Origin: Hydrolagus colliei
Taxonomy: Eukaryota
Assembly: GCA_035084275.1 (NCBI GenBank)
Contig: CM068774.1
Span: 558,001-622,000 of the forward strand
Reading direction: 5' to 3'
DNA: 64,000 nt
The translations under genes and the position numbers were made by a program. Below, piece after piece: positions 2,572-60,085 of this stretch. The notes under the pieces were generated by a model that was not told the origin of the DNA, made no database searches, and saw only the letters and a program-made list of their open reading frames with translations. The number at the start of each line of letters is the position of its first letter. The stretch's first letter is position 1.

Positions 2572-2886
2572 CATACACAGTGAGATTGTAGAGGTTTTCA
2601 AGTTTACTCCCATGTTTCGTGGTTGTGACCACCCTATACACCCCAGTGTCTGTGAGCTGCAGGTCACTGATCTGTACAGTCAGGTTCTCTGTGTGAACAG
2701 CCACACGGTTCCTCATCTCCTTAATCACAAAGTAGTCAACCTGTCCAGGCTCATATTCTGCTATTGTCTGGTCTGGAGTCTGGAGGATCCACTCAACACG
2801 TCTGATCTCCCCCAGGGAGAGAGGCTGAGGGTATGGGAGCCACGCACTGTCACCCAGTGTCCCATTAACAACAACAACAGCGTCAC
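2572..2886 (-). CDS. Gene D cysteine-less IgV exon
   Basis: Acceptor (CT)n-TGTAG, donor GTAAGT, 315 nt, phase 1/1, open: [20 protein letters not shown]...[14 protein letters not shown]...YNLTVY. Resembles CD84/SLAMF N-terminal domains (VNGILGESVTFP...ISDL...YNLQIY). Confidence 0.9.
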
Positions 2887-5800
2887 CTACAGAGAGAGAG
2901 AGAGAGAGAGAGTGAGGGAGGGATTGTCACTGAGCGAGTGTGTGGGACAGTCTGAGAAACACACACACGCACACACACACACCAATAGACAGAGACACAC
3001 ACACATAGAGAGAGACATACACAAAAATGGAGAGTGATACAGACAGATTGACAGAGACACACAAAGGCTACAATGTAAAGTTAGTTTTCTGGCCAAATGC
3101 GGCAGCCAATTGCGCCCAGCAACGTCCCTCAAACAGCCGGGGAGTGAAGTGACCACATTATTTTTTTCTTGAGGGATTATTATTAGAAGCGTGACTTTGT
3201 GTGTGTGGGTCTATGTGTGTGTGGGCGGAATAAGGAAACTTGCCTAAGGTTTCACCCTGAACTGTCCCACCCAGGAACCCAGGTTCTATCGCTTGAGAGC
3301 GCTCTAACCACTGAGCAGCACAGACACACACAGAGACAGAGACACAGACTGAGTTACACACAAAGTGGATGTTTCCATGTTTCTCAAACACTCAGCTAAC
3401 CGCAACAACATCTCTCTTCCTCTCTCAGTCTCTCTATCTCTCTCTCTCTCTGTCTCTCTACACTCTCTCTCACTCAATCTCTGTCTCTCTCTCGTTCTCT
3501 CTCACTCTTGCTCAATCCTTCTCTCACGCTCTCTTATAACAGCAAGCCCGTACGCAGGGGGGGTGCGACGGGTGCGTACGCACCCCCCCAAATTATAAAA
3601 GGTCCACATTTTCCGGGGTAGAGAATTGCATTTTTTATCAAATTTAAATACCAAGTAAATTTATTGAGGATTTGTGTAACAATCAGTTCTTCAAAACTAT
3701 GTATAAATTATAAATACACATCTTTGAATGATTTAGTATTAATATAAAATTATCGAGTCGCACACCAGAATCGGCGTCTCCCCAAAACATACCGCGTCGA
3801 TAGACCAGTCCATGACGCGGCGAGTCTGTGACTCGTGATTGGATAAACATAGGCGCCAAGACTCAAATCCTCGTTTGGAAATCATCCCGTAAACAGCCAC
3901 AAGGGGCAGCACCACTACTGGAGTTAAAATCATCTTTTCATCTGATCACCGTAAGTAAAAATTGCTCAAGTTTTGAGAGGTGTGACTGTAATGCCAGCAA
4001 ACAATGACAACATATGTACAAGCTTCTGAGAAATTAAAGCTTTTGAGAACCCAACAAAAAAGTTACATGTGTCTGGATGGGAATGCCTATCTTTAAAAGA
4101 AATACTCATGGACGTAGGCCTAGGCTTTAGCGCCTATTCCACGTGGTGTGTCAATCGGAAATCATCCCGTATACAGTCACTACATAAAAAGGTAGGACCA
4201 CTTTGTGGAAGCTGAAATCGTATTTTAATCTGATAAATGTAAGTAAAAATGACTTAAGTTTTGATAGGCGTGTTTCTGAAACATCATGTATCTTGTTATG
4301 TCTTGATTATCACATTTGATTTATATTATTAAAGATGTATTCCTGTCATTAAAAATTGCTTTTAGAGACGTCCACTGGCATGCAAAAAACATATGACCGC
4401 AAAGATAAACAGTGCGACTTTATTTCACATTCAGTTTTGTACCCAGAGTGAAAAAACATCAATGTCGCACGAATTTGGCATAAAAATAGTTTCACCGTCA
4501 TCTGATCGAGCGAACTCGGGCATTGACAACCACACTTCTCCACTGATCCCTTCTCTCCATGCAGCCTGAACACTCCCGCCTGCCAATACCCCAATCGCGC
4601 TCCAGAGTATCGATGTAGGTTAGGGTCGGTCTACCTCGTGTTTTGTGACCGTGCAATGGTTTCCATGGGATAGTAGCACTATGGACAGTTTCCTCCTGGC
4701 TTCTCCAGCTATGTCCGCTAAACCAAAGACGCCTCTGCAGTAATGTCTGTGATACCAGTGTGGTAGTGTACCATATAGCTCACTATTTGTCAGATGCTGT
4801 CGCCAGTAAACGTTCAGGGCGTCTCTTAGAAGCCTGGTATATACCTCACGAGTCACCTAATCTCCTGGTCGAGGTTTGCCTAAGTGTCCAGCATTCTGCT
4901 CCGTATAGGAGCGACTTTCAGCCCTCGCGTTAATGCACATTCATTATAATATGGAAATCGATATTGGTAGAGCGGTTGACGTATTCGCTTCAAAGCGACC
5001 GAGGCGTCTCGAATACGGAACGCTATTAAAGAATTAATTTCCCCTCCCTTATTTTTTCAAGTATTTTTTCGTCAGATCAGTATTGCTTGATGGGTCACTG
5101 CCTTTAATTGTGATTCTAAATAAATAAATAAAAACTAACTACACTATTGCTCACAGTTCAACGATATTTTCAGGATAATGCTGATAACAGGCTTGTAACA
5201 CGTGTGAATTAACTGTTTTACACTGATTTTCAGTTTCTGTATATTTTCTTGTCTTTTATAAAATTTGCTTTGCTGGAATATCTGAGCACATCATTCATAC
5301 TTTACTCTTACATTATTGTTCATTACAGTCCGAAAGAAATTTAGTCTTAGGATAACAATGCAGAACAACTTATTAATTACCGTCAATCTGTAGTTTATGA
5401 TCATTTTCTCTATACGCCTACATTTATCAAGCATTCGTCATTGTACTGTGTTAATTGGATTGTAATTTACTTTATCGTTCGCATTCCTTACATCATCGAG
5501 TCAACAATCGTGTTGGCTTTTATTGGTGAACACATTCGACCTTCCCAATTAGACACGGACTACCGGGGAAAATAAAAACACTGAATAAATAATGATGCTC
5601 TTAAACACCAAGGGCATGAAACATTTACCGTTCATATTGGATCTTCTGAACCGATTAAATAAGACTTCAAACTGTGTAAAACGTCGGAGCCTCGAGGGGG
5701 CCTCGGGGGCAGCCCCCAAGCCGCCGGCCATTGTTGGTCCCATCACTAGCAATTCGCACCCCCCCAAAAAAAATCCTGCGTACGGCCCTGAACAGCGACT

Positions 5801-6075
5801 TTCTCCCGCAGCAAAACATCTCAAAGTACTTTCCAGGACTCGTTGAGAGACTGAGGCAGAGAGAGAGAGAGAGCAACAGAGAGACTGTGTCTTTTGTCTC
5901 TCTCACACATGCTCTCTTCATCTTTCGCACTCTCTTTCCCACCCATTCTCCCTCTCTCTCTCTCTGTCTACCTCTCACACTCTCTCTCTCTCCTACCTCC
6001 ATTTGCAAATCCCCCGAAATTTTCCACAGAAACAATAACAGCGACAGAGAGAAACAGTCCACAGTCAGTCAACAT
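2572..6075 (-). CDS. Gene D (partial): CD2/SLAM-family receptor, leader + IgV exon; remainder lies left of the window
   Basis: Leader exon 5997-6075 (phase 1) is phase-compatible with V exon 2572-2886; no C2 exon within the window. Confidence 0.75.
3060..3320 (-). mobile_element. tRNA-headed SINE (partial)
   Basis: Minus strand: box A-like GCTCAGTGGTTAGAGC, linker ggcaagtttccttat, (CA)n, then gcgcaattggctgccgc core shared with other copies. Confidence 0.7.
3543..5790. mobile_element. Non-autonomous DNA transposon, hAT-like termini, 5-bp TSD
   Basis: 16-bp TIRs CAAGCCCGTACGCAGG (3543-3558) and reverse complement CAGGGCCGTACGCAGG (5775-5790), 14/16 match; AACAG on both flanks (3538-3542, 5791-5795); no transposase ORF seen. 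Confidence 0.75.
4600..4915 (-). mobile_element. RTE/RTEX-type LINE RT C-terminal fragment inside the DNA transposon
   Basis: Translates to SLLYGAECWTL ... YTRLLRDALNVYWRQHLTNSELYGTLP (one frameshift), characteristic of the post-RT region of RTE-clade elements. Confidence 0.75.
5997..6075 (-). CDS. Proximal leader (signal peptide) exon of gene D
   Basis: ATG at 6075, MLTDCGLFLSVAVIVSVENFGGFANG+G, 79 nt, donor GTAGGA; same length, phase and ANG ending as the other leaders. Confidence 0.8.
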
Positions 6076-8133: not shown

Positions 8134-8212
8134 CTCCATTTGCCAAGCTCCCCACAGTGTTTATGGATATGATGGTGAGAATGGAGAGAAGTGATCGAGA
8201 ATCCAACGCCAT
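8134..8212 (-). CDS. Distal leader exon (second first exon upstream of gene D, or orphan)
   Basis: ATG at 8212, MALDSRSLLSILTIISINTVGSLANG+G, 79 nt, donor GTAGGG; close paralog of the gene A and B leaders. Confidence 0.8.
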
Positions 8213-9655: not shown

Positions 9656-9659
9656 GTGA

Positions 9660-12100: not shown

Positions 12101-12179
12101 ATGGCGTTGGATTCTCGATTGCTTCTCTCCCTTCTCACCGTCATATCCATATACACCGTGCGGAGCTTGGCAAATGGAG
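12101..12179 (+). CDS. Gene A leader exon
   Basis: MALDSRLLLSLLTVISIYTVRSLANG+G, 79 nt, donor GTAGGG. Confidence 0.85.
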
Positions 12180-13638: not shown

Positions 13639-13947
13639 GTAAACCTGTCGATGTGCCCGGTGTGTTGAACCATTCGATCTGGCTCCCATACCCTGAGAAA
13701 CTCTCTCTGAAGGAGATCAGCCGTATTGAGTGGATACACCAGGCCTCACTCAAGATAATAGTGGAATATCAGGATGGGAAGGCTGACTACTTTGGGAATG
13801 AGGAGATGACGAAACGTTTGGCTGTTCACACAAACCTGACTGTACAGATCAGTGACCTGCAGCTCACAGACACTGGGGTTTATGTGGTACAAACAGTGTT
13901 TAATGATAGGAAAAAACATCAAACCTTCTACAGTCTTACTGTTTATG
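13639..13947 (+). CDS. Gene A IgV exon
   Basis: Acceptor ATCTAG, donor GTAAGT, 309 nt, phase 1/1, open: KPVDVPGVLNHSIWLPYPE...[14 protein letters not shown]...YSLTVY. Confidence 0.9.
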
Positions 13948-17620: not shown

Positions 17621-17760
17621 AGACAGGTTTGAACCTGTGGAAGGAGGAATGGGGAGGGGGTAGCAGTATAGATATAGATCCACTGTCTCTTTTAGTCTAT
17701 TTGTGTCTCTCCCTCTTCCCCTCCCTAACACACTCTCTCCCCCCTCTCTCTCTTTAACAG

Positions 17761-18043
17761 AGCGAGTGACTGGAGTTGAAATCACCTCCTCTCTCACTAA
17801 AGGCCAGTGCAATGGGACTCTGACGTGTGATGTGAAGTCTGGTAAACCAGTTATCTTTGTGTGGGAGAGAGATGGGGTTCGTTTGCCCATTTCCCAGCCC
17901 AGTGACAACCGCTACGCTCTCTGTCACTCTCTCCCCCAAACGACAGTAACACTGTGTTCACGTGTAAAGCTGGGAACCCAGTGAGTGAGGATTTTAAAGA
18001 GATTTCCTTCCAGGACAGAGAATTCTGTGTCAAGTCTCCTATG
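17761..18043 (+). pseudogene. Gene A IgC2 exon with three single-base indels
   Basis: First 147 nt identical to the gene B and C C2 exons; +1 at gacaacc, +1 at cccccaaac, probable -1 at cctatg; 283 nt; as written the frame stops at TGA 17982-17984. Confidence 0.8.
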
Positions 18044-20073: not shown

Positions 20074-20273
20074 NNNNNNNNNNNNNNNNNNNNNNNNNNN
20101 NNNNNNNNNNNNNNNNNNNNNNNNNNNNNNNNNNNNNNNNNNNNNNNNNNNNNNNNNNNNNNNNNNNNNNNNNNNNNNNNNNNNNNNNNNNNNNNNNNNN
20201 NNNNNNNNNNNNNNNNNNNNNNNNNNNNNNNNNNNNNNNNNNNNNNNNNNNNNNNNNNNNNNNNNNNNNNNNN
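20074..20273. other. Assembly gap (200 N), expected position of gene A TM exon
   Basis: Flanks are homologous to gene B sequence upstream (40770-40920) and downstream (43760-43953) of its TM exon. Confidence 0.9.
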
Positions 20274-21109: not shown

Positions 21110-21189
21110 AAACGTCTCCAAAACTGGAACCTATCTGCCCGGAAACAAAGGATGGAGTGAGTGAGGAGGACTTGCCCCAAGCCAAACAG
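21110..21189 (+). CDS. Gene A cytoplasmic exon 1 (ITSM lost)
   Basis: Acceptor (CT)nTAAAG, donor GTAAAC, phase 1/0, (E)TSPKLEPICPETKDGVSEEDLPQAKQ; 21 nt longer than the gene B exon. Confidence 0.8.
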
Positions 21190-24382: not shown

Positions 24383-24475
24383 CATGAATCAGAACCTCCT
24401 GCGCCTTCAACTGTCGATGCAGCTGGTGCACATTGTGAGGAGGTTGAAGGTTCAAGTAGTATTCTTCCAGAGTAA
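24383..24475 (+). CDS. Gene A cytoplasmic exon 2 (ITSM lost)
   Basis: Acceptor ttttaccctcAG, HESEPPAPSTVDAAGAHCEEVEGSSSILPE*; upstream intron and coding start align with 45321-45430. Confidence 0.75.
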   Translation, partial: HESEPPAPSTVDAAGAHCEEVEGSSSILPE

Positions 24476-28723: not shown

Positions 28724-28802
28724 ATGGCGTTGGATTCTCTGTCACTTCTCCCCGTTCTCATCGTCATATCCATAAACACCGCGGGGAGCTTGGCAAATGG
28801 AG
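28724..28802 (+). CDS. Gene B leader exon
   Basis: [26 protein letters not shown]+G, 79 nt, donor GTAGGG. Confidence 0.88.
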
Positions 28803-46190: not shown

Positions 46191-48850
46191 CCTTCAGCCT
46201 TCAGGAGGGAGGGAGGGAGCGAGGGAGGGAGGGAGGGAGGGAGGGAGGGTGTTGAGGAAACTTGCCCAATGTTTCACCCTGACTTGAACTCAGACCCTCT
46301 TGCTTGCGAGGCTTGAGCTCTAACCTCTGAGTTACAGGACCTGCTCCTCATTACATTGATATTACTAATAATAATAGTAATAATCATTATAATCATTGCA
46401 TTTGATAATTTGATGCAGCGGCTTTTCACGTCTTTTAGACGGTGTCTCAAGGTGCTTCATACAATAGACTGTAAACGTGTAGTGACTGTATGGCTGTGGG
46501 AGAGCGAAACGCAGCATCAGCTTCCCCCACACAAACAGCCAACAGAAAAAATAATTTACTTTTTAATCAAATTGTTTTTGAAATAGCTACATTAATGATC
46601 AACAGAGAAACTGAGAGAGTGAGAGAGAGACTGAGTGAGACTGAGAGAGAGAGTGTGAGAGAGAGACTGAGTGAGACTGAGAGAGAGAGTGTGAGAGAGA
46701 GACTGAAATAAAATGAGAGACTGAGCGAGAGAAAGACTGAGAGTGATACTGAGAGAGACTGAGTGAGAGAGAGAGATTGAGAGAGAGATTGAGAGAGAGA
46801 GAGAGAGAGAAAGGGGACTGAGTGAGAGAGACTTAAATAGAGTGAGAGACTGAGTGAGAGAGAGACACTGGGAGAGACTGAGTGAGAGAGAGACCAGAGT
46901 AGTGGGGGAGCGGGTGGGGGGTAGGGGTAGGGGGATGGAGAGGAGGAGAATTGACTGTGANNNNNNNNNNNNNNNNNNNNNNNNNNNNNNNNNNNNNNNN
47001 NNNNNNNNNNNNNNNNNNNNNNNNNNNNNNNNNNNNNNNNNNNNNNNNNNNNNNNNNNNNNNNNNNNNNNNNNNNNNNNNNNNNNNNNNNNNNNNNNNNN
47101 NNNNNNNNNNNNNNNNNNNNNNNNNNNNNNNNNNNNNNNNNNNNNNNNNNNNNNNNNNNNTGGTGCTGGATAAACAGGCTTTTACTGTGTATACGGTAGT
47201 AGTGAATCACAACGATACCACTGGCAATACGAGGAGTAGTCGCTGGAGACAAACAGTCACGTTTGCGTTGTAACATACACACCATCACATAATCATCAAC
47301 AATTTAAAGTTTGTATTTTCATAAGGGAGGCACAGCCCACCTCTGCGCCCCCTGACTGCAGGTCAATGATACAGACAGAGAGAGACACACACACTCACAG
47401 ACACACACACTCACAGACACACACACACACACTTACACACACAGACAGAGATCGAGACAAAAACATAAAAATATAAGTAGGAGCAGGAGTAGGCCATTCA
47501 GCCCCTCGAGCCTGCCCCGCCATTTAATAGGATCACGGCTGATATTCCATCCTGATTCCATTTACCCGCCTATGATTTTTTAAAAAACTATCAATCTCAG
47601 GCTTGAATATGTTCAAGGACTGACTGAGCATCAACAGCCTTTTGGGGGTAGAGAATTCCATCGATTCACTGCCCTCTGAGTGAAGAGGTGTTTCCTGAAC
47701 TCAGCGCGAAAAGGCTGACCCCTAATCTCAAGACTGTGAGAGTTATAGTTTCTCCAACCAGGGGAAACAGTCTCCCACTGTCTATAGGGCCCTACACAGC
47801 TGCAGCACGACTCCCTCAGCCTTGTACTCTAACAACAACAACAACAAAATTGCATTTATACAGCGCCTTTCACGTCGGGTGGACATCCCAAAGCTCTGAA
47901 CAGTCTGGTCAGGACCCGAGTGGGGGGGGAGGGGAAGGAGAGGGGGAGAGGGGGGGACAGTTAGTGGGGGTGAAGAGGAAGGTGTTGAGACCGGCCTTGA
48001 AGGAGGAAAGGGGGGAAGCGAGGGGGGGGGGGGGGGGGCTGTGGGATGGAGTCCCACAGTGTGGGGGCAGAGAGGCTGAGAGCCCGGCCCCCGATGGTTG
48101 GGGGGTTAGGGAGGTGGACGAGGAGCAGACCTGAGGCTGCTGAGCGGAGGGGACGGGCACAGGCTGATAGGGGGACAGTAGGTCAGAGAGACAGGCGGGG
48201 ACAAGGCCGTGAATGGCCTTGAAAGTGAGGACGAGGATCTTGAATTGGATCCTCTGGGGGACGGGGAGCCAGGGGAGACGGGCGAGGGGGGGAGTGATGT
48301 GGCGGGAAGCCTGGTGCAGGAGAGAACACAGACTGAGACACACTTGCTAATACTTTTGTCCATAAAACACAGTCACTACACTGTCCAGTGCATGCTGTGA
48401 AGCGCTTTCAGATGTCTGGAATACATGATCAGGATCTTTGGCAAACGTAAGGATTAATGATGACATTACCGGATTTCTCAACACAAACCACAAAGGCTCT
48501 CTCAACTTCTCTCACGCTCTCTCTCACTCTCTCAGTGTCTCTCTCTCTCAGTTTCTCTCCTTGACACACTATCTTTCACCCCCCCCCCCCCACCCCGCGA
48601 GACGTCACAAAGCGCTCCCCAGGACTTGCTGTAAACTGTAGTGACTGTGCGTTCAACACGAGACTGAGAGAAACACACACACACACGGATAACCCCATTT
48701 CTACACTCCTCCTTTCTTTCTCTCTCTGTATCGCAATCTTCCGCTCGTTTCTACCTCTGTCTCTCACTCACACGCAGTCATTTTCTTTCTCTCTCACACA
48801 CACCCTCACAATCGCTCGCGCACACACACACTCCTCCTGTCTCTCCCTAC

Positions 48851-48920
48851 CTTCAGCTCCAAAGCACACGACATTTTGTGTAGAAATAATAGCGAAAGCG
48901 AGAATGTAGCTGGCCTTCAT
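48851..48920 (-). CDS. Orphan inverted copy of gene C leader exon
   Basis: MKASYILAFAIISTQNVVCFGAE+G, donor GTAGGG, same as 55163-55232; no minus-strand V exon follows before 2886. Confidence 0.7.
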
Positions 48921-48945
48921 TGTTCCTTTCCGTTCTTCACACAGG

Positions 48946-48955
48946 AGGATGTGGT
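48946..48955. promoter_or_regulatory. ETS:RUNX-like motif, duplicated gene C promoter
   Basis: AGGATGTGGT, mirror of 55128-55137. Confidence 0.5.
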
Positions 48956-49009
48956 AAACCAGCTTGTTGGTAAACCTCCGTGTGTCTGACATGCGCAGGA
49001 ACCCGTCAC

Positions 49010-49395
49010 CGTGTTAAATAATAATAAACAATCCTGGCATTTGGATATCGCGGCCTTTCACATCTGACCGACGTCTCAAAGCGCTTCACAGGATATACTG
49101 TAAAGTGTAGTGACTGTATATTAGTGGGGGAGCGAAACGCGGCAGCCGATTGCGCACTGCAGCGTCCCCCCACACACAGTCGTGCGCTGAAAATGACCAA
49201 TTTTATTATTGTGTATTTTTTTGCATGGATTATTAAAGGGCGGGTGTGTGTCTGTGGTCTGTGGTGTGTGTGTCTGTGATGTGTGTCTGTGATGTGTGTC
49301 TGTGGTGTGTGTCTGTGGTGTGTGTGATGTGTGTCTGTGATGTGTGTAGGAAGGAAACTTGCCCAAGATTTTGCCCTGACCTGCCTGGATTCGAA
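49010..49395 (-). mobile_element. tRNA-headed SINE (head truncated by gap); mirror copy at 54642-55068 (+)
   Basis: TTCGAATCC box B-like, linker, (CA)-rich spacer, cagtgcgcaatcggctgccgcgtttc core, L2-like tail. Confidence 0.7.
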
Positions 49396-49916
49396 NNNNN
49401 NNNNNNNNNNNNNNNNNNNNNNNNNNNNNNNNNNNNNNNNNNNNNNNNNNNNNNNNNNNNNNNNNNNNNNNNNNNNNNNNNNNNNNNNNNNNNNNNNNNN
49501 NNNNNNNNNNNNNNNNNNNNNNNNNNNNNNNNNNNNNNNNNNNNNNNNNNNNNNNNNNNNNNNNNNNNNNNNNNNNNNNNNNNNNNNNNNNNNNNNNNNN
49601 NNNNNNNNNNNNNNNNNNNNNNNNNNNNNNNNNNNNNNNNNNNNNNNNNNNNNNNNCCCGGTGTCTATCTGACACACATAGAAACCCATCACCATGAGTT
49701 GGGGAGACCAGCGAGGAGGGAGGGAGGTTGGGAGGGAGGGAGGGAGGGAGGGAGGGATCGTGCATCAGGCAGTGGCAGCATCAGCCTCCATGGTTCCTCA
49801 CTCGACCTCTCCAAGCCAGTCAGGAACCTCGGTGTCTCTTGTTCGACCCTCAACTGTCTTTCCTCCCCCACAGCCCAGGCCATGACTCTCTCTGCCTTTC
49901 CCCATCTCCGCAACAT

Positions 49917-51096
49917 AGAATCATAGAATCATAGAATTTTACGGCACAAAAGGAGGCCATTCAGCCCATCTAGTCTGTGCCGGCTCTTGGAAAAGAGCGA
50001 TTCAATCCCACTGCCCTGTCCGCTCCCAATAGCCTAATAGACCTGTTCTCCCTAAATAAAGATCTAATTCCCTTTTAAAAGTTGTTATCAAATCAGCCTC
50101 CACCACCTTTTCAGTTATCAAATCAGCCTCCACCACCTTTTCAGGCAATGCATTCCAGATTCGAACAACTCGCTGAGTGAAAAAATTTCTCCTCAGCTCC
50201 CCTCTACTGCGCCTTGAAACTATTTTAAATCTGTGACCACGAGTCACAGATTCGCCCACGAGTGGAAATAGTTTTTCTCTATTTGCCCTGTCGAAACCCC
50301 TCATGATCTTATAAACTTCTATTAGGTCTCCCCTCAATCTTCTCTGCTCCAGAGAGAATAACCCTAGCCTATCTAGCCTCTCCTCATAGCTGAAGTCCCT
50401 CAATCCTGGCACCATCCTAGTAAATCTTCTTTGTACCCTTTCCAATGTCTTCACATCCTTTCTGTAATGTGGTGACCAGAATTGAACACAGTATTCCAGC
50501 TGAGGCCTCACCAAAGTCCTATAGAGGTTAGTCAGCACTTCCTGACTTTTGTACTCTATACCCCTATTTATAAAGCCTAGTATCCCATATGCCTTCTTAA
50601 CAGCCTTGTCTACCTGTCCTGCCACCTTCAACGAGTCACTAACACAAATCCCCAGGTCTCTCTGTTCCTTCACACCATTTAAAATTGTACTATCTAGCCT
50701 ATATTGCCTCCCTTCATTTCTTCTCCCAAAATGCATCACCTCACACTTCTCTGCATTAAACTTCATCTGCCATGTGTCTGCCCACTTTACCAATTTGTCT
50801 ATATCCTCTTGCAGATGGCTACTATCCTCCTCACTGTTTACTATTCTCCCTAACTTAGTGTCATCTGCAAACTTGGAAACTGTACTCCGTACACCCAAGT
50901 CCAGATCATTGATGTAGATTACAAACAGCAATGGTCCCAAAACTGATCCCTGTGGCACACCACTGCTCACTTCCCTCCAGTCTGAAAAACAGCCGCTCAC
51001 TACAACTCTCTGCTTTCTGTCTCGCAGCCAGTTGTGGATCCACGCTGCCACTGTCCCTTTTACGCCATGGGCCTTTAATTTCATATTGGGCAATTT
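49917..51096 (-). mobile_element. Young 5'-truncated CR1, left arm only
   Basis: 366-aa open frame (GVPQGSVLGP, FADDTKL); (CATAGAAT)n tail; TSD CAACAT (49911-49916, 51097-51102); 30-nt in-frame tandem duplication (EKVVEADLIT twice). Confidence 0.93.
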
Positions 51097-51299
51097 CAAC
51101 ATTGCCCGACTCCGCCATTACCTCACCCCCAAAGCCACTGAAACCCTCATCCAGGCCTTCATTACATCCCGGCTTGACTATGCAAACGCCTTGCTGGTCG
51201 GCCTTCCCAACCCCTCCCCCCCCAGGCCGCAGATAATCCAGACTCTGTGGCCCATGTCCTCTAGCATGTGAGTGTGTCAGACAGAGAGAAAGAGGGAGA

Positions 51300-52115
51300 G
51301 TATGTGACAACAACAACAAATTACATTTATAGAGCGACTTTCACGTCGGGAGGACGTCCCAAGGCGCTGCACAGGAGGCGTGTGACCCGAGCTGGGAGGG
51401 GAGTGTTTGGGAAGGGGTGAAACACGAAGGGGAGGTAAAAGAGTTCGGGGTGGAACAAAAGGCACGATCGAAGAGGAAAGTCTTCAAACCGGCCTTGAAA
51501 GAGGAAAGGGAAGAAACGAGAGGAGGGATTGAGGGATGGCATTCCATAGGGTGGGAGCGGAGAAACTGAAGGCCCGGCCTCCGATGGTGGGGCGGTTCGG
51601 GCGGGGGGCTTGGAGCAGGCCAAGTCCTGTTGAACGGAGGGTCCGGGTGGGCGTGTAGGGGGAGAGTAGATCGGTTAAATAGGGCGGGGCAAGGCCGTGT
51701 AAGGCCTTGTAGGTGAGGACGAGGATCTTGAACTCGATCCTCTGGAGGATGGGGAGCCAGTGGAGACGGGCGAGGGTGGGGGTTATGTGGTCGCGGAGGC
51801 GGGTGCGGGATAGTACACGGGCTGCAGAGTTTGGATGGCCTGCAGCCTGTGAATGGAGGAACTGGGGAGGCCGACGAGGAGAGTTTCCGTAGTCCAGCCG
51901 TGAGGTGATGTACACATGCACAAGTGTTTTGGCAGCGCGGGGGGTGAGGTAGTTGCGGAGCCTGGCAATATTGCGCAGGTGGAAATAAGCGGTGCCGGTC
52001 AAGGCGCGGATGTGGGGGAGGAAGGAGAGGTTTGGGTTGAACATGATGCCGAGGTTCCTGATTGGCTTTGTGAGGTGGAGAGTACAGCCTTGGATGTTGA
52101 GGCTGGCAGTGCCCG
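51300..52115 (-). mobile_element. Young L2 3' fragment (left arm); mirror at 52965-53770 (+)
   Basis: [23 protein letters not shown]...[14 protein letters not shown] and (TTG)n tail. Confidence 0.88.
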
Positions 52116-52271
52116 ATATACAGTCACTACAGTAAAGTGTAGTGACTGTGTATATATTGTTAGAGATTAAATTCTCAGGTTGAAAATATCAATTTCTCCA
52201 GTCAAAAATGAGGTTACAGCCAGCCTCCGATTGACCAGGTACTACTGATTCATTTCTTTTAAAACAAATAT

Positions 52272-52921
52272 TGTTAGAATTGGTGAAGAACTGGTGAAAA
52301 TTAGTATAGACTGTTAAAAACAGAGAGTGGGCTAGAATGATGCTATGTGATGTTGTTGTATAACTGCTGTATAAGATAAGGGAAGTTACTACACATAGTT
52401 TGAGTCATCCAGGTCACCATTAGAAACCGGCTAGAACAGACTGCGATAAGAAGAGCTCGTTTGCGAAGAAAGGCAGAGTTGGGTGTAAAAGAGGATGTGA
52501 ATAAGCACGAGAGTGGCATGAGATGTTCACGTGAACACCATGTGTCCAAGAAAGGATAAAAGTGTTGAGACACAGGAATAGAGCGGAGACGGAGGAGCAG
52601 AAGGAGAAGGACCTGATGGAAGATACTGTAACGTGACAGCAGATCCCCAAAGAGATCAACACCCCTACTTTTCCCCCAGACTGACTGAGAGGAGGCAAGG
52701 AAGAGAAAGGACTATTCCCTTTTAACCTGAAGAATGCGTGCCGGGTAGTATATTGTAGTCGTTGTAGTCGTTTTATATGCTTTAGTGTCAGCTCAATGAG
52801 TATACCTGAATAAAATAACCTGTTTTAAAGAAATGAATCAGTAGTCAATCGGAGGCTGGCTGTAACCTCATTTTTGACTGGAGAAATTGATATTTTCAAC
52901 CTGAGAATTTAATCTCTAACA
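52272..52921 (+). mobile_element. Solo LTR at the centre of the fold-back
   Basis: TGTTAGA...TCTAACA termini, 4-bp TSD ATAT (52268-52271, 52922-52925), AATAAA at 52809-52814; same family as 60362-61231. Confidence 0.8.
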
Positions 52922-55127
52922 ATATATACACAGTCACTACACTTTACTGTAGTGACTGTATATCGGGCGCTGCCAGCCTCAACATCCAAGGCTGTACTCT
53001 CCACCTCACAAAGCCAATCAGGAACCTCGGCATCATGTTCGATCAAAAACTCTCCTTCCTCCCCCACATCCGCGCCTTGACCGGCACCGTTTATTTCCAC
53101 CTGCGCAACATTGCCAGGCTCCGCAACTATCTTACCCCCCGCGCTGCCGAAACACTCGTGCACACGTACATCACCTCACGGCTGGACTACGGAAACTCTC
53201 TCCTCGTCGGCCTCCCCAGTTCCTCCATTCACAGGCTGCAGGTCATCCCAAACTCTGCAGCCCGTGTACTATCCCGCACCCGCCTCCGCGACCACATAAC
53301 CCCCACCCTCGCCCGTCTCCACTGGCTCCCCATCCTCCAGAGGATCGAGTTCAAGATCCTCGTCCTCACCTACAAGGCCTTACACAGCCTTGCCTATTTA
53401 ACCAATCTACTCTCTCCCTACACGCCCACCCGGACCCTCCGTTCAGCAGGACTTGGCCTGCTCCAAGCCCCCCGCCCGAACCCCCCCACCATCGGAGGCC
53501 GGGCCTTCAGTTTCTCCGCTCCCACCCTATGGAATGCCATCCCTCAATCCCTCCGTCTCGTTTCTGCCCTTTCCTCTTTCAAGGCTGGTTTGAAGACTTT
53601 CCTCTTCGACCGTGCCTTTTGTTCCCCCCGAACTCTTTTACCTCCCCTTCGTGTTTCACCCCTTCCCAAACACTCCCCTCCCAGCTCGGGTCACACGCCT
53701 CCTGTGCAGCGCCTTGGGACGTCCTCCCCACGTGAAAGTCGCTCTATAAATGTAATTTGTTGTTGTTGTCACATACTCTCCCTCTTTCTCTCTGTCTGAC
53801 ACACTCACATGCTAGAGGACACGGGCCACAGAGTGTGGATTATCTGCGGCCTGGGGGGGAGGGGTTGGGAAGGCCGACCAGCAAGGCGTTTGCATAGTCA
53901 AGCCGGGATGTAATGAAGGCCTGGATGAGGGTTTCAGTGGCTTTGGGGGTGAGGTAATGGCGGAGTCGGGCAATGTTGCGGAGATGGGGAAAGGCAGAGA
54001 GAGTCATGGCCTGGGCTGTGGGGGAGGAAAGACAGTTGAGGGTCGAACAAGAGACACCGAGGTTCCTGACTGGCTTGGAGAGGTCGAGTGAGGAACCATG
54101 GAGGCTGATGCTGCCACTGCCTGATGCACGATCCCTCCCTCCCTCCCAACCTCCCTCCCTCCTCGCTGGTCTCCCCAACTCATGGTGATGGGTTTCTATG
54201 TGTGTCAGATAGACACCGGGATGGTCCTTGCAGCTCCNNNNNNNNNNNNNNNNNNNNNNNNNNNNNNNNNNNNNNNNNNNNNNNNNNNNNNNNNNNNNNN
54301 NNNNNNNNNNNNNNNNNNNNNNNNNNNNNNNNNNNNNNNNNNNNNNNNNNNNNNNNNNNNNNNNNNNNNNNNNNNNNNNNNNNNNNNNNNNNNNNNNNNN
54401 NNNNNNNNNNNNNNNNNNNNNNNNNNNNNNNNNNNNNNNNNNNNNNNNNNNNNNNNNNNNNNNNNNNNNNNNNNNNNNNNNNNNNNNNNNNNNNNNNNNN
54501 NNNNNNNNNNNNNNNNNNNNNNNNNNNNNNNNNNNNNNNNNNNNNNNNNNNNNNNNNNNNNNNNNNNNNNNNNNNNNNNNNNNNNNNNNNNNNNNNNNNN
54601 NNNNNNNNNNNNNNNNNNNNNNNNNNNNNNNNNNNNNNNNNTCGAATCCAGGCAGGTCAGGGCAAAATCTTGGGCAAGTTTCCNNNNNNNNNNNNNNNNN
54701 NNNNNNNNNNNNNNNNNNNNNNNNNNNNNNNNNNNNNNNNNNNNNNNNNNNNNNNNNNNNNNNNNNNNNNNNNNNNNNNNNNNNNNNNNNNNNNNNNNNN
54801 NNNNNNNNNNNNNNNNNNNNNNNNNNNNNNNNNNNNNNNNNNNNNNNNNNNNAATCCATGCAAAAAAATACACAATAATAAAATTGGTCATTTTCAGCGC
54901 ACGACTGTGTGTGGGGGGGACGCTGCAGTGCGCAATCGGCTGCCGCGTTTCGCTCCCCACTAATATACAGTCACTACACTTTACAGTATATCCTGTGAAG
55001 CGCTTGAGACGTCGGTCAGATGTGAAAGGCCGCGATATCCAAATGCCAGGATTGTTTATTATTATTTAACACGGTGACGGGTTCCTGCGCATGTCAGACA
55101 CACGGAGGTTTACCAACAAGCTGGTTT

Positions 55128-55137
55128 ACCACATCCT
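55128..55137. promoter_or_regulatory. ETS:RUNX-like composite motif, gene C promoter
   Basis: ACCACATCCT about 25 nt upstream of ATG 55163, although the flanks have diverged from genes A and B. Confidence 0.55.
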
Positions 55138-55162
55138 CCTGTGTGAAGAACGGAAAGGAACA

Positions 55163-55232
55163 ATGAAGGCCAGCTACATTCTCGCTTTCGCTATTATTTC
55201 TACACAAAATGTCGTGTGCTTTGGAGCTGAAG
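55163..55232 (+). CDS. Gene C leader exon
   Basis: MKASYILAFAIISTQNVVCFGAE+G, 70 nt, phase 1, donor GTAGGG. Confidence 0.8.
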
Positions 55233-58200
55233 GTAGGGAGAGACAGGAGGAGTGTGTGTGTGCGCGAGCGATTGTGAGGGTGTGTGTGAGAGAGAAGAAA
55301 ATGACTGCGTGTGAGTGAGAGACAGAGGTAGAAACGAGCGGAAGATTGCGATACAGAGAGAGAAAGAAAGGAGGAGTGTAGAAATGGGTTATCCGTGTGT
55401 GTGTGTGTTTCTCTCAGTCCTCGTGTTGAACGCACAGTCACTACAGTTTACAGCAAGGCCTGGGGAGCGCTTTGTGACGTCTCGCGGGGTGGGGGGGGGG
55501 TTGAAAGATAGTGTGTCAAGGAGAGAAACTGAGAGAGAGAGACACTGAGAGAGTGAGAGAGAGCGTGAGAGAAGTTGAGAGAGCCTTTGTGGTTTGTGTT
55601 TGAGAAATCCGGTAATGTCATCATTAATCCTACGTTTGCAAAGATCCTGATCATGTATTCCAGACATCTGAAAGCGCTTCACAGCATGCACTGGACAGTG
55701 TAGTGACTGTGTTTTATGGACAAAAGTATTAGCAAGTGTGTCTCAGTCTGTGTTCTCTCCTGCACCAGCTTCCCGCCACATCACTCCCCCCCTCGCCCGT
55801 CTCCCCTGGCTCCCCGTCCCCCAGAGGATCCAATTCAAGATCCTCGTCCTCACTTTCAAGGCCATTCACGGCCTTGTCCCCGCCTGTCTCTCTGACCTAC
55901 TGTCCCCCTATCAGCTGTGCCCGTCCCCTCCGCTCCAGCAGCCTCAGGCCTGCTCCTCGTCCACCGCCCTAACCCCCCAACCATCGGGGGCCGGGCTCTC
56001 AGCCTCTCTGCCCCCCACACTGTGGACTCCATCCCACAGCCCCCCCCCCCCCCCCTCGCTTCCTCCCTTTCCTCCTTCAAGGCCGGTCTCAACACCTTCC
56101 TCTTCACCCCCACTAACTGTCCCCCCCCTCTCCCCTCTCCTTCCCCTCCCCCCCCACTCGGGTCCTGACCAGACTGTTCAGAGCTTTGGGATGTCCACCC
56201 GACGTGAAAGGCGCTGTATAAATGCAATTTTGTTGTTGTTGTTGTTAGAGTACAAGGCTGAGGGAGTCGTGCTGCAGCTGTGTAGGGCCCTATAGACAGT
56301 GGGAGGCTGTTTCCCACTGGTTGGAGAAACTATAACTCTCACAGTCTTGAGATTAGGGGTCAGCCTTTTCGTGCTGAGTTCAGGAACACCTCTTCACTCA
56401 GAGGGCAGTGAATCGATGGAATTCTCTACCCCCAAAAGGCTGTCGATGCTCAGTCAGTCGTTGAACATATTCAAGCCTGAGATTGACAGTTTTTTTTAAA
56501 ATCATAGGCGGGTAAATGGAATTAGGATGGAAAGTCAGCCGTGATCCTATTAAATGGCTGGGCAGGCTCGAGGGGCTGAATGGCCTACTCCTGCTCCTAC
56601 TTATATTTATGTGTTTTTGTCTCGATCTCTGTCTGTGTCTGTGTGTGTGTGTAAGTGTGTGTGTCTGTGAGTGTGTGTGTCTCTCTCTGTCTGTATCATT
56701 GACCTGCAGTCAGGGGGCGCAGGGGTGGGGCAGTGCCTCCCTTATGAAAATACAAACTTTAAATTGTTGATGATTATGTGATGGTGTGTATGTTACAACG
56801 CAAACGTGACTGTTTGTCTCCAGCGACTACTCCTCGTATTGCCAGTGGTATCGTTGTGATTCACTACTACCGTATACACAGTAAAAGCCTGTTTATCCAG
56901 CACCCTCGGGNNNNNNNNNNNNNNNNNNNNNNNNNNNNNNNNNNNNNNNNNNNNNNNNNNNNNNNNNNNNNNNNNNNNNNNNNNNNNNNNNNNNNNNNNN
57001 NNNNNNNNNNNNNNNNNNNNNNNNNNNNNNNNNNNNNNNNNNNNNNNNNNNNNNCTCCCGCCATTGCCTTCACACCTCAGGCAGTGGCAGCATCAGCCTC
57101 CATGGTTCCTCACTCGACCTCTCCACGCCAGTCAGGAACCTCGGTGTCTCTTGTTCGACCCTCAACTGTCTTTCCTCCCCACAGCCAGGCCATGACTCTC
57201 TCTGCCTTTCCCCATCTCCGCAACATTGCCCGACTCCGCCATTACCTCACCCCCAAAGCCACTGAAACCCTCATCCAGGCCTTCATTACATCCCGGCTTG
57301 ACTATGCAAACGCCTTGCTGGTCGGCCTTCCCAACCCCTCCCCCCCAGGCTGCAGATAATCCAGACTCTGTGGCCCGTGTCCTCTACTGCTCCAAACTCC
57401 GTGACCCCGTCTCCCCCCATCCTCGGCCAGACTCCATTGACTCCCCATCACCCAGAGGATCCAATTCAATATCTTGGTCCTCACACATAAAGCCTCTACA
57501 ACCTCTCCCCACCGGCTAAAGGGCGAGCCTTCACTCACTCTGCCTCCAACCTCTGGAACTCCATCCCACAGTCCCCCGCCTCGCTCGCCCCCTCGCTGGC
57601 CTCCCTCAAGTCTCATCTCAAGACTCTCTTCTTCAATGGTCCCATCAGGACGTCTTCCGACGTGAAAAGCGAAATACAAAATGTAATTTTGTTGTTGTAA
57701 TGAGGGAGTGGGAGCTTCTGTGGCCTTTAATCTGTTTCCCTCCTTGGGTTTGATTGTGTGTTCAAAACGGCCATGAAAGCTCCCCCCTCCCCCATTACAA
57801 TCATCACCTCCAGACACCCACTTGCCTCTGGTGTGTTGCCTGCTCTCCCAGGCGAGGGCGGGAGGGTCCATGGAGACCTGCAGCTCAGTGGTTAGATCCC
57901 TCACCTCACAAGCGAGAGACCTGGGTTCGATTCCCGGCAGGTCAGGGCAAAACCTTGGGCAAGTTTCCTTACTCCGCACACACACACAGTCACACACACA
58001 CAGTCACACACACACACAGACATACTGATAGTACAGCCTCACTGTACATCTGTGCCCTCACTGATATACAAAGAAACATCTTAAACACCATATGTTAGGG
58101 GTGACACCCAGTACAGTATTGGAGCTGGGTTGATGACGACGTTCATATGGACTGAGGGAAGCGCCCACCCTGTCATGTTACCCTCCTCATGTCACTGCTC

Positions 58201-59223
58201 TGTCTGTGTCTCTCTCAGTCTCTCTCTCTCTCTCTCTCTCTGTAGTGACGCTGTTGTTGTTGTTAATGGGAAACTGGGTGACAGTGTGTGGCTCCCATAC
58301 CCTCAGCCTCTCTCCCTGGGGGAGATCAGACGTGTTCAGTGGATCCTGCCCTCAGGCCAGTTATTAGCGGAATTCTACAGAGGGCAGATTGAACACTTTA
58401 CTGTGACGAGGATCAATGTGACAGTGAACCTGACTGTACAGATCAGTGACCTGCAGCTCACAGACACTGGGGTGTATAGGGTGGTCACAGTGACGGGAAA
58501 GGGGAGTCAGTATGAAAACCTCTACAATCTCACTGTTTACGGTAAGTTTGGTCTCCTCCCTCTCTCTTTCATTGCCACTCTCCCTCTCTAACTTTCTCCA
58601 CCCCCCCTCCCTCTCTCTCCCTCCCTCTTCCTCACTCTCCCCCACCTCTCTCCCCCTCCCCCTCGCTCTCCCCCGCTTTCCCTCTCTCCCTCCCTCTCCC
58701 TCGCTCCCCCCACCTCTCTCCCCCTCGCTCCCCCTCTCTCTCTCTCCCCCCTCTCTCTCTCTCCCTCGCTCCCCCCTCTCTCTCTCTCCCTCGCTCCCCC
58801 CTCTCTCTCTCTCTCCCTCACTCTCCCCCCACCTCTCTCCCCCTCCCCCTCGCTCTCCCCCGCTTTCCTCTCTCCCTCCCTCTCCTCCCTCGCTCCCCCA
58901 TCTCTCTCTCTCCCTCGCTCCCCCCCCTCTCTCTCCCCCTCGCTCCCCCCCCCCACTCTTTCTCTCCTTCGCCATCCCCCTCTCCCCCCACCCCCCCTCC
59001 CTCTCCCTCGTACTCCCCTCAACAACAACAACAACTTCAATTTATATAGCACCCTCCACGCCGGACGGTGTCTCAGAGCGCTTGGAGCCCTTCTCTCTCT
59101 CTCTCTCTCTCCTCCCTCTCCCTCACCTCCCACCTCTCCTCTCTCTCTCTCCCCTTCGCTCCCCCTCACTCTTTCTCTCCCTCGCCCCCCCCCTCCTCTC
59201 TCTCTCCCTCCCTCCCACCCGTC

Positions 59224-59254
<31 letters not shown>

Positions 59255-60085
59255 CCTCTCTCTTGCTCCCCCATTCCCACTCTCCCTCTGAGATGCTATC
59301 CAGCATGGAGGTCTCTGTATCAATGCAAATTGTTGTTGTTGCTCCTGCATTCAACAGCTCTCTCTCTCCCCCTCTCTCTCACTATCTCCCTCTCTCTCTC
59401 ACTAACACTCTCTCTCACTAACTCTCTCCCTCTCTCTCTCTCACAGAGCGAGTGACTGGAGTTGAAATCACCTCCTCTCTCACTAAAGGCCAGTGCAATG
59501 GGACTCTGACGTGTGATGTGAAGTCTGGTAAACCAGTTATCTTTGTGTGGGAGAGAGATGGGGTTCGTTTGCCCATTTCCCAGCCCAGTGACACCGCTAC
59601 GCTCTCTGTCACTCTCTCCCACAGTAACACTGTGTTCACGTGTAAAGCTGGGAACCCAGTGAGTGAGGATTCGGCAAAGATTACTTTCCAGGACAGAGTA
59701 TCTGTGTTGCGTCTTCTAATGGTGAGTGTGTGTGAGGGAGAGAGAGTGAGTGTGTGTGAGGGAGAGAGGGAGTGAGTGAGTGTGAGGGAGAGAGGGAGTG
59801 TGTCAGAGAGAGTGTGAGAGAGGATGTGTGTATTTGGTGTGAGACGTTGGGATGGATTGAGATGATAGAAGGGGATGTCTGCCGTGTGTATAAGTGAGAG
59901 AGACAGAGAGTGTCAGACACAGAGAGAGAGAGAGAGAGAAAGGATAAGCAGAGGCATGAGAGATTTCAAAATGAATATTTTATGTTTGTTTTACAGGGAA
60001 TTCAGCTCACAGACACAGTGAAGCCTCAGTCACAATTATTGCATTATTTTTTATAGAATTTATATTTGTTGAATACATTTTATAA
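55163..60085 (+). CDS. Gene C: CD48-like IgV-IgC2 protein with GPI-signal-like C-terminus (two -1 indels as assembled)
   Basis: Exons 55163-55232, 58246-58541, 59447-59721, 59997-60085; V and C2 exons are each 1 nt short of phase 1/1 symmetry. Confidence 0.7.
55770..56610 (+). mobile_element. L2 3' fragment followed by CR1 3' end (mirror of 47460-48310)
   Basis: L2 tail with (TTG)n at about 56230-56245, then CR1 tail ending ctcctgctcctacttatatttatg. Confidence 0.75.
57075..57700 (+). mobile_element. L2 fragment; third copy of the segment that holds the CR1 in the left arm (empty site)
   Basis: cgcaacattgcccgac uninterrupted at about 57220. Confidence 0.7.
58246..58541 (+). CDS. Gene C IgV exon
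   Basis: [20 protein letters not shown]...[14 protein letters not shown]...YNLTVY; donor GTAAGT; acceptor reads TGTAG|TGACG, one G fewer than paralogs (296 nt). Confidence 0.85.
59447..59721 (+). CDS. Gene C IgC2 exon
   Basis: RVTGVEIT...QCNGTLTC...[11 protein letters not shown]; 275 nt; adding one base at gagtatc restores ..DICVASSN|G (4th Cys and phase 1). Confidence 0.85.
59997..60085 (+). CDS. Gene C terminal exon, GPI-anchor-signal-like
   Basis: Acceptor gtttgttttacAG, preceded by sequence homologous to the gene B pre-TM intron; phase 1 reading (G)NSAHRHSEASVTIIALFFIEFIFVEYIL*; ATTAAA at 60098-60103. Confidence 0.7.

What the first reader, a model, noticed from the sequence alone, without database searches (positions are those of the whole stretch)
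2572..60085. A SLAM/CD2-family cluster whose members share one ectodomain design but have three different membrane and signalling outputs
Seen: four loci with leader / Cys-less IgV / four-Cys IgC2 exons. Gene B has a TM segment and two TxYxxV motifs, gene A has the homologous tail with both tyrosines lost, and gene C ends in a GPI-signal-like peptide. Established: ITSMs in SLAMF1, CD84 and 2B4 recruit SAP/EAT-2, and CD48 is a GPI-linked ligand of CD2 and 2B4. Inference: this is a lineage-specific receptor / decoy / ligand set in a probable cartilaginous fish, expanded independently of the mammalian SLAM locus. None of it is visible as a whole gene in the ORF track.
Basis: partly seen in the sequence, partly recalled or inferred. 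Interest (0 to 1): 0.85.

Follow-up and report, generated by a model that had tools for sequence, protein, structure and literature searches.

The report
Chimaera SLAM-family cluster, one intact receptor
This stretch of cartilaginous-fish DNA holds a tandem cluster of SLAM/CD2-type immune-receptor genes, but only one copy (a receptor with two tyrosine switch motifs) reads through cleanly, so the proposed receptor/decoy/ligand trio is not shown.

Summary
The exons are real and belong to the CD2/SLAM family. The ectodomain profile hits CD2 and SLAMF6 best by sequence (E about 1e-15), and the predicted fold matches NTB-A, CD2 and CD48. The nearest proteins are two Callorhinchus milii "SLAM-like" proteins (52-54% identity), which form one clade with all four window genes.

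- **Gene B (28724-45460):** six exons with canonical splice sites and consistent phases give a 310-aa type I receptor. It has a Cys-free V domain, a four-Cys C2 domain, a TM segment and two ITSMs (TLYAVV, TIYATV).
- **Gene A:** the homologous tail has lost both tyrosines, as claimed. However, its C2 exon (283 nt) carries three 1-bp indels and a premature stop, and no TM exon is visible. An assembly gap sits where that exon is expected.
- **Gene C:** the last exon is a truncated homologue of B's TM exon and looks GPI-signal-like only in phase 1. Its V exon (296 nt) and C2 exon (275 nt) each lack one base, so nothing joins in frame and the fourth Cys is lost.
- **Gene D:** only the leader and V exon lie in the window.

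Verdict: this is a lineage-specific SLAMF cluster, a new member of a known kind. A and C are probably pseudogenes, or else affected by assembly errors.

The parts
8134..8212 (-). Leader exon, gene D side (MALDSRSLLSILTIISINTVGSLANG, phase-1 donor GAG|GTAGGG)
5997..6075 (-). Second leader-like exon, nearer to D's V exon (MLTDCGLFLSVAVIVSVENFGGFANG). It most resembles gene C's leader.
2572..2886 (-). Gene D V exon, 315 nt, phase 1-1, open, no Cys. No C2 exon follows in 1-2571, so the gene runs off the window.
12101..12179 (+). Gene A leader exon
13639..13947 (+). Gene A V exon, 309 nt, phase 1-1, open, no Cys
17761..18043 (+). Gene A C2 exon, 283 nt. It has 1-bp insertions at about 17907 and 17936, a 1-bp deletion at about 18040, and an in-frame stop at 17982-17984. 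The four Cys codons are spread over different frames.
20074..20273 (.). Assembly gap in gene A's intron, where the TM exon would be expected. Not filled.
21110..21189 (+). Gene A cytoplasmic exon 1. It is a homologue of B's first ITSM exon with a 21-nt insert, and the Tyr is lost (ETSPKLEPICPETKDGVSEEDLPQAKQ).
24383..24475 (+). Gene A cytoplasmic exon 2. TIYATV is replaced by TVDAAG, so the Tyr is lost. The stop is at 24473-24475.
28724..28802 (+). Gene B leader exon (signal peptide)
30033..30341 (+). Gene B V exon, phase 1-1, no Cys
39151..39429 (+). Gene B C2 exon, 279 nt, phase 1-1, four Cys in frame
41636..41755 (+). Gene B TM exon ([22 protein letters not shown] followed by KLKKKGK)
42455..42706 (+). 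V-exon remnant plus its upstream intron, lying inside B's TM-to-cy1 intron. It is cut off by the 51-bp minisatellite at 42701.
43954..44012 (+). Gene B cytoplasmic exon 1 with ITSM TLYAVV
45374..45460 (+). Gene B last exon with ITSM TIYATV and the stop codon
55163..55232 (+). Putative gene C leader (MKASYILAFAIISTQNVVCFGAE, phase-1 donor). It is separated from the V exon by gap 56911-57054.
48851..48920 (-). Inverted copy of C's leader exon in the other palindrome arm. It has no V exon partner.
58246..58541 (+). Gene C V exon, 296 nt. One G is missing right after the acceptor, so it needs phase 2 and does not join the phase-1 leader in frame.
59447..59721 (+). Gene C C2 exon, 275 nt. A 1-bp deletion at about 59698/59699 puts the 4th Cys out of frame, and the donor is then in phase 0.
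59997..60085 (+). Gene C terminal exon, a truncated homologue of B's TM exon. It reads as a hydrophobic GPI-signal-like peptide only in phase 1. An ATTAAA hexamer lies at 60098.
47162..56904 (.). Large inverted duplication between genes B and C. The arms 47162-49231 and 54853-56904 are 97.3% identical, with assembly gaps at mirror positions.

Best explanation
The window carries a tandem, partly inverted cluster of CD2/SLAM-family genes from a holocephalan: Callorhinchus or a close relative.

**Gene B** is an intact type I receptor. It has a signal peptide, a disulfide-free V domain for trans-binding (inferred, by analogy with SLAMF members), a C2 domain with two disulfides, a TM helix, and a short tail with two ITSMs. 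Once phosphorylated, these ITSMs would recruit SAP-type SH2 adaptors (inferred).

**Genes A and C** are decaying paralogues. A has three 1-bp indels and a stop in its C2 exon and has lost both ITSM tyrosines. C has 1-bp deletions at the V acceptor and before the fourth C2 cysteine, and a truncated TM exon.

**Gene D** is cut by the window edge.

The paralogues still exchange sequence by gene conversion. A 150-nt tract of the C2 exon is identical in A, B and C, and a 47-nt tract of the V exon is identical in all four genes.
For: - **Gene model:** B has six AG/GT exons, consistent phases and a 310-aa ORF. It is collinear with C. milii XP_007883923.1, including both ITSMs and the C-terminus.
- **Family assignment by sequence:** profile against PDB gives CD2 at 2e-15 and SLAMF6 at 2.5e-14.
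- **Family assignment by fold:** the AlphaFold model has pLDDT above 90 over the ectodomain. Foldseek's top hits are NTB-A, CD2 and CD48 (TM 0.78-0.82), about 1e5-fold better than nectin or CEACAM.
- **Wider family:** 1118 family hits, and those I named are SLAMF, Ly9 or CD48-like.
- **Conserved cysteines:** the four C2 Cys are invariant or at least 90% conserved in 51 sequences.
- **Adaptor:** a SAP orthologue exists in C. milii and in catshark.
- **Frame breaks in A and C:** alignments to B and to the C. milii paralogue, whose C2 exon also ends in phase 1.
- **No rescue found:** there is no alternative phase-2 leader for C and no TM exon for A.
- **Conversion tracts:**
Against: - All five indels are single bases and three lie in homopolymer runs, so assembly errors cannot be excluded.
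- A's and C's exons have no stop codons when each is read in its own conserved frame, and all their splice sites are intact. If the frame breaks are real, they are recent.
- V-exon dN/dS of 0.83-1.27 does not separate neutral decay from diversifying selection.
- There is no expression data.
- A's TM exon may be hidden in the gap.
Confidence: 0.62

Rival explanations
1. All of A, B and C are functional: B is an ITSM receptor, A a tyrosine-less decoy, and C a GPI-anchored ligand made by truncating the TM exon. The frame breaks are sequencing or assembly errors.
For: - Each exon of A and C is open in its own conserved frame, with intact AG/GT sites.
- C's terminal exon in phase 1 has small residues (SNGNSA), a polar spacer and an 18-aa hydrophobic end. 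An ATTAAA hexamer lies 13 nt after the stop.
- That exon is homologous to B's TM exon in the ancestral frame.
- GPI-like and tail-less members exist elsewhere in the family, for example coelacanth CD48.
- Three of the five indels lie in homopolymers.
Against: - It needs five independent 1-bp errors within about 1.2 kb of exon sequence in A and C, while B's 933-nt CDS and D's exons have none.
- A has no visible TM exon.
- C's leader-to-V link crosses a gap and lies beside a palindrome.
- There is no binding or expression evidence.
Confidence: 0.22
2. Gene C, and possibly A, is expressed as assembled but makes a different product. This could be a secreted or truncated form made through other exons, cryptic splice sites, or exons hidden in gaps.
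For: - With the phase-0 donor, C's C2 exon continues into GIQLTDTVKPQSQLLHYFL*. This is a short non-hydrophobic end compatible with secretion.
- Gaps at 56911-57054 and 20074-20273 could hide exons.
Against: - C's V exon cannot be joined in frame to any leader found.
- The fourth C2 cysteine, at least 90% conserved in the family, would be lost.
- A hits a stop inside its C2 domain.
Confidence: 0.08
3. The exons belong to another IgSF family with a Cys-free N domain, such as CEACAM, rather than to CD2/SLAM.
For: - One frog relative in the hit list is auto-named 'CEACAM5-like'.
- CEACAM structures appear among the weaker fold hits.
Against: - The top sequence and fold hits are CD2, SLAMF6, CD84 and CD48, by about five orders of magnitude.
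- The four-Cys C2 domain, the ITSM tail and the exon plan match SLAM.
- Nearly all named relatives are SLAMF, Ly9 or CD48-like.
Confidence: 0.02

Closest known systems
Callorhinchus milii 'signaling lymphocytic activation molecule-like' XP_007883923.1 and LOC103173067
   Same: - The exon plan and domain order are the same.
- The N-terminal half of the C2 domain is nearly identical.
- Both ITSM positions and the ...APGAN..NL C-terminus match (XP_007883923.1).
- The same 51-bp minisatellite and SINE/LINE families surround the genes.
- They fall in the same clade with SH-aLRT 100.
   Different: - Overall identity is only 52-54%, and about 50% in the V domain.
- No database protein matches any window gene more closely. 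These are therefore unannotated paralogues, or orthologues in another chimaera.
Mammalian SLAM-family ITSM receptors (SLAMF6/NTB-A, SLAMF1, CD84)
   Same: - The ectodomain has a V domain without the disulfide and a C2 domain with two disulfides.
- The tail carries TxYxx[V/I] switch motifs.
- The fold matches NTB-A at TM 0.78-0.81 with 28-29% identity.
- The ITSM consensus is taken from PMC3958483.
   Different: - There is no one-to-one orthology, because the chimaera genes form their own clade.
- Ligand specificity and SAP binding are untested.
CD48 / CD58-type GPI-anchored CD2-family members
   Same: - Gene C has the family ectodomain exons.
- Its terminal exon is derived from a TM exon, has no cytoplasmic part, and is hydrophobic in phase 1.
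   Different: - As assembled, that peptide is out of frame with the ectodomain.
- The V exon is out of frame with the leader.
- The fourth C2 cysteine is lost.
Lineage-specific CD2/SLAM expansions in other non-mammals (Xenopus: Guselnikov et al. 2011, cited in PMC4536121; slamf genes in the elasmobranch MHC: PMC10751288)
   Same: Tandem multigene clusters with diversified TM and tail exons, where the clades follow the taxon.
   Different: - This is a holocephalan cluster.
- No flanking genes lie in the window, so linkage to the MHC or any other region cannot be checked.

Membership tests
CD2/SLAM family (IgSF) | N-terminal V-set domain lacking the canonical intradomain disulfide | tested here: met
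   Pfam V-set E = 2e-8 to 3e-6. There is no Cys in the V exons of A, B, C or D.
CD2/SLAM family (IgSF) | Membrane-proximal C2-set domain with four conserved cysteines (two disulfides) | tested here: met
   Met for gene B: C146, C152, C197 and C218 are invariant or at least 90% conserved in 51 sequences. Not met in frame for A (frameshifts and a stop) or for C (4th Cys out of frame).
CD2/SLAM family (IgSF) | Closest solved relatives by sequence and by fold are CD2/SLAMF members | tested here: met
   hmmsearch against PDB: CD2 2e-15, SLAMF6 2.5e-14, CD84, CD48. Foldseek: NTB-A, CD2 and CD48 at TM 0.78-0.82.
CD2/SLAM family (IgSF) | One exon per module (leader, V, C2, TM, short cytoplasmic exons), with phase-1 Ig exons | tested here: met
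   Gene B phases are 0-1, 1-1, 1-1, 1-1, 1-0 and 0-stop, all with AG/GT sites. The C. milii paralogue has the same boundaries.
SLAM subfamily (ITSM / SAP-coupled receptors) | Cytoplasmic ITSM TxYxx[V/I/L] | tested here: met
   B has TLYAVV and TIYATV, conserved in XP_007883923.1. A has lost both tyrosines. The consensus is from PMC3958483.
SLAM subfamily (ITSM / SAP-coupled receptors) | SAP/EAT-2 adaptor present in the lineage | tested here: met
   An SH2D1A-like protein exists in Callorhinchus milii (69% identity, E = 9e-42) and in Scyliorhinus. Its presence in the window's own species is inferred.
SLAM subfamily (ITSM / SAP-coupled receptors) | Phospho-ITSM binds SAP/EAT-2, and the ectodomain binds itself or a family member | not testable with these tools
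   This needs peptide pull-down or SPR and ectodomain binding assays.
GPI-anchored CD2-family members (CD48/CD58 type) | C-terminal GPI signal in frame with the ectodomain | tested here: not met
   Gene C's hydrophobic peptide is in phase 1, while its C2 exon ends in phase 0, and its V exon is out of frame with the leader.
GPI-anchored CD2-family members (CD48/CD58 type) | No cytoplasmic exons after the anchor exon | tested here: met
   No tail-exon homologue lies downstream of 60085, and ATTAAA lies at 60098. The window ends at 64000.
CEACAM family | Groups with CEACAM N and A/B domains rather than with CD2/SLAM | tested here: not met
   CEACAM is absent from the best 60 sequence-profile hits listed. 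It is about 1e5-fold weaker than SLAMF6/CD2 by fold.

The most novel reading that the evidence does not exclude
The five single-base frame breaks in genes A and C are assembly errors. In that case a chimaera-specific SLAMF cluster really encodes a matched trio that shares a gene-converted ectodomain:
- an ITSM receptor (B);
- a tyrosine-less non-signalling copy (A);
- a GPI-anchored copy (C) made by truncating the TM exon.

This would be an independent reinvention of the mammalian 2B4/CD48-style receptor-ligand split.
Probability: 0.2. Interest if true: 0.5.

Novelty: new member of a known kind. Interest (0 to 1): 0.3.

Why it matters
SLAM-family receptors tune lymphocyte and NK-cell responses in mammals. 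Their state in the oldest jawed vertebrates shows when the ITSM/SAP switch arose.

This window shows that a chimaera has an intact ITSM-bearing SLAMF gene of the canonical design, and a SAP orthologue exists in the lineage. It also shows that the family evolves there by local duplication, inversion, gene conversion and decay.

That fits what is already annotated in sharks, rays and Callorhinchus. The value is therefore a careful gene model and a correction of the proposed three-output story, not a new kind of system.

Tried and rejected
- **TM exon for gene A.** I searched with tblastn using B's TM exon and both C. milii TM exons, with blastn using B's TM exon and intron, and with a hydrophobicity scan. 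Nothing was found in the readable sequence.
- **Alternative phase-2 leader for gene C.** Only low-complexity TG-repeat ORFs turned up.
- **dN/dS of the V exons.** I hoped to separate pseudogenes from selected genes, but values of 0.83-1.27 are uninformative.
- **Closer annotated proteins.** None exceeds 58% identity in the V domain.
- **Literature.** I searched for SLAM in cartilaginous fish and found only a mention of slamf in the elasmobranch MHC.
- **CEACAM reading.** Rejected on sequence and fold ranks.
- **Long ORFs of the 'ORF track'.** These are LINE reverse-transcriptase and endonuclease fragments, not genes of interest.
- **A Ly9-like four-domain gene.** I considered whether the V remnant at 42.6 kb makes B such a gene. 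I rejected this because the remnant lies after the TM exon and is cut off by a minisatellite.

Full report
**The window.** The window is vertebrate-type DNA with GC 0.507 and CpG o/e 0.43. It has six N-gaps, many SINE/LINE copies and a 51-bp minisatellite. The long ORFs listed mechanically are LINE reverse-transcriptase and endonuclease fragments.

**Finding the exons.**
- Candidate Ig exons from the ORF list served as tblastn queries. These found five V-type exons: 2572-2886 on the minus strand, 13639-13947, 30033-30341, 58246-58541, and a truncated one at 42599-42706.
- They also found three C2-type exons at 17761-18043, 39151-39429 and 59447-59721. E-values ranged from 1e-26 to 1e-72.
- Pfam calls these V-set and Ig_2/ig domains.
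- A scan for ATG-started hydrophobic exons with a phase-1 donor found clearly paralogous leader exons. These are 12101-12179 (A), 28724-28802 (B) and 8212-8134 (D side).
- A second leader type occurs at 6075-5997 (D side) and 55163-55232 (C), with an inverted copy at 48920-48851.
- A motif scan found TLYAVV at 43974 and TIYATV at 45401, each in a short exon with AG/GT sites.
- A hydrophobicity scan found one TM exon at 41636-41755.

**Gene B.**
- Joining 28724-28802, 30033-30341, 39151-39429, 41636-41755, 43954-44012 and 45374-45460 gives a 933-nt ORF. Every intron has AG/GT and the phases are 0-1, 1-1, 1-1, 1-1, 1-0 and 0-stop.
- The 310-aa product has a signal peptide, a Cys-free V domain and a C2 domain with four Cys. 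It also has a 22-residue TM helix followed by KLKKKGK, and a tail with two ITSMs.
- It aligns end to end with Callorhinchus milii XP_007883923.1, 'signaling lymphocytic activation molecule-like' (54% identity). Both ITSM positions and the C-terminal ...APGAN..NL match, which validates the exon model.
- The ITSM consensus TxYxxV/I/L is taken from PMC3958483.

**Family placement.**
- A three-sequence profile hits CD2 (1hnf, 2e-15), SLAMF6/NTB-A (2if7, 2.5e-14), CD84 and CD48 first among solved structures. Antibodies and other IgSF proteins are far weaker, and no CEACAM appears in the listed hits.
- The AlphaFold model has mean pLDDT 82.8, and above 90 over the two Ig domains. Its best Foldseek matches are NTB-A, CD2 and CD48 at TM 0.78-0.82. 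These are about five orders of magnitude ahead of nectins, PD-L1 and CEACAMs.
- Against 1.84 billion representatives the profile finds 1118 proteins. Those I looked up are named SLAMF5-, SLAMF8-, Ly-9-, SLAM- or CD48-like in sharks, rays, coelacanth, lungfish, paddlefish, frogs, birds, turtles and mammals.
- In a 51-sequence alignment the four C2 cysteines, the V-domain Trp, and the Asp, Gly and Tyr of its D-x-G-x-Y motif are invariant or nearly so.
- In a 116-sequence tree the four window genes and the two C. milii proteins form one clade with SH-aLRT 100 on a long stem. This clade is separate from the elasmobranch clade (99) and from the tetrapod and teleost clades.
- The expansion is therefore lineage-specific, and there is no one-to-one orthology with a mammalian SLAMF gene.
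- A C. milii contig carrying LOC103173067 shares the minisatellite, the repeat families, and the C2 exon with its flanking introns at about 80-82%. The source is therefore Callorhinchus or a close chimaera.
- No database protein is closer than 58% to any window V exon, so these copies are unannotated.
- A SAP (SH2D1A) orthologue exists in C. milii and in catshark.

**Gene A.**
- The leader and V exon are intact.
- The C2 exon is 283 nt. Relative to B, C and the C. milii paralogue it has single-base insertions at about 17907 and 17936, and a single-base deletion at about 18040.
- The conceptual mRNA therefore stops at 17982-17984, and the four Cys codons lie in different frames.
- No TM exon is found in the readable sequence. 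The gap 20074-20273 lies exactly between the pieces that correspond to B's introns on either side of its TM exon.
- The tail exons are present with good splice sites. However, TLYAVV is replaced by PICPETKDGVSEE, including a 21-nt insert, and TIYATV is replaced by TVDAAG.
'Decoy' is unsupported.

**Gene C.**
- The V exon begins ...ctgtag|TGACGC, whereas its paralogues have ...tag|GTGACGC. It is 296 nt and needs phase 2, but the only homologous leader ends in phase 1. Joining the two gives a stop after about 40 codons.
- No alternative phase-2 leader exists.
- The C2 exon is 275 nt. A 1-bp deletion at about 59698/59699, just before the fourth Cys codon, makes it read ...FQDRVSVLRLLM and end in phase 0. 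B and the C. milii gene both end in phase 1.
- The terminal exon (59997-60085) shares its upstream intron and part of its sequence with B's TM exon.
- In the ancestral phase 1 it reads GNSAHRHSEASVTIIALFFIEFIFVEYIL*, which does look like a GPI signal, and an ATTAAA hexamer follows at 60098.
- In the phase dictated by the assembled C2 exon it reads GIQLTDTVKPQSQLLHYFL*.
- The GPI reading therefore requires two base corrections.

**Gene D and other pieces.**
- D has two candidate leaders and an intact 315-nt V exon, but no C2 exon before the window edge.
- A V-exon remnant with its upstream intron sits in B's TM-to-cy1 intron and is cut off by the minisatellite.

**Gaps.** No exon model touches a gap. 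Besides the gap in A's intron, the remaining gaps bound or interrupt, at mirror positions, an inverted duplication. Its arms 47162-49231 and 56904-54853 are 97.3% identical, and 49657-49916 matches 54220-53973 at 95.4%. This duplication contains both copies of C's leader. Continuity across the gaps is unknown, and I did not try to fill them.

**Concerted evolution.** A 150-nt run covering the last 4 nt of the upstream intron and the first 146 nt of the C2 exon is identical in A, B and C, while the flanks are 58-76% identical. A 47-nt run in the V exon is identical in all four genes. The C. milii paralogue differs in the same C2 tract, including at synonymous sites. This pattern points to gene conversion within the cluster.

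**Weighing pseudogene against assembly error.**
- Five single-base lesions fall in A and C, and none falls in B's 933 nt or D's exons. This favours real decay, although the contrast is not statistically strong.
- Three of the five lesions are in homopolymers, and no exon has a stop in its own frame. Errors or very recent inactivation therefore remain possible.
- V-exon dN/dS is about 1 and does not help.

**Verdict.** This is a real, lineage-specific SLAM-family cluster with one demonstrably intact ITSM receptor. The three-output design is only partly visible and is not in frame. The kind of system is already known and is annotated in related genomes (PMC10751288; Guselnikov 2011 via PMC4536121).

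Noticed in passing
47162-49916 and 53973-56904: A large inverted duplication lies between genes B and C. The arms are 97.3% identical over 2.08 kb, with a further 95% segment. Assembly gaps sit at mirror positions in both arms and at both outer ends. Each arm carries a copy of gene C's leader exon.
   Followed up: partly
52271-52829 and 60361-61202: The centre of the palindrome holds a 96-97% identical direct copy of the DNA that lies about 280 bp downstream of gene C's last exon.
   Followed up: no
17757-17906, 39147-39296, 59443-59592; also about 47 nt in each V exon: A 150-nt run (the last 4 intron bases plus the first 146 nt of the C2 exon) is 100% identical in genes A, B and C, although the flanks are only 58-76% identical. 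A 47-nt tract ([15 protein letters not shown]) is identical in all four V exons. This looks like gene conversion among paralogues, including the frame-broken ones.
   Followed up: partly
42701-43525, 44072-45306, 21197-21590, 23478-24333, 9662-10556; L001 16519-17881: A 51-bp minisatellite flanks the ITSM exons of B in opposite orientations. It also lies in A's tail introns and next to the tail exons of a C. milii paralogue, so it seems to be an old feature of these introns.
   Followed up: partly
8134-8212(-) and 5997-6075(-): Two different leader-type exons lie upstream of gene D's V exon. The nearer one resembles gene C's leader, and the farther one resembles those of A and B. They could be alternative first exons or an orphan from a lost gene.
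   Followed up: no
42455-42706: A V-exon fragment with its upstream intron is most similar to gene A's V exon (73%). It sits inside gene B's intron between the TM exon and the first ITSM exon. This may be the remnant of a further gene copy whose tail exons B now uses.
   Followed up: partly
21986-22993, 32053-34838, 50002-51102(-), 6368-7117: LINE fragments with reverse-transcriptase and endonuclease ORFs, plus many SINE-like copies, fill the introns and spacers. These account for the long ORFs of the window.
   Followed up: yes
L001 17413-17939 (-): In the C. milii contig, the tail exons matching XP_007883923.1 lie on the opposite strand, downstream of LOC103173067. That cluster therefore also has tail-to-tail genes, and the older model may combine exons of neighbouring paralogues.
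   Followed up: no
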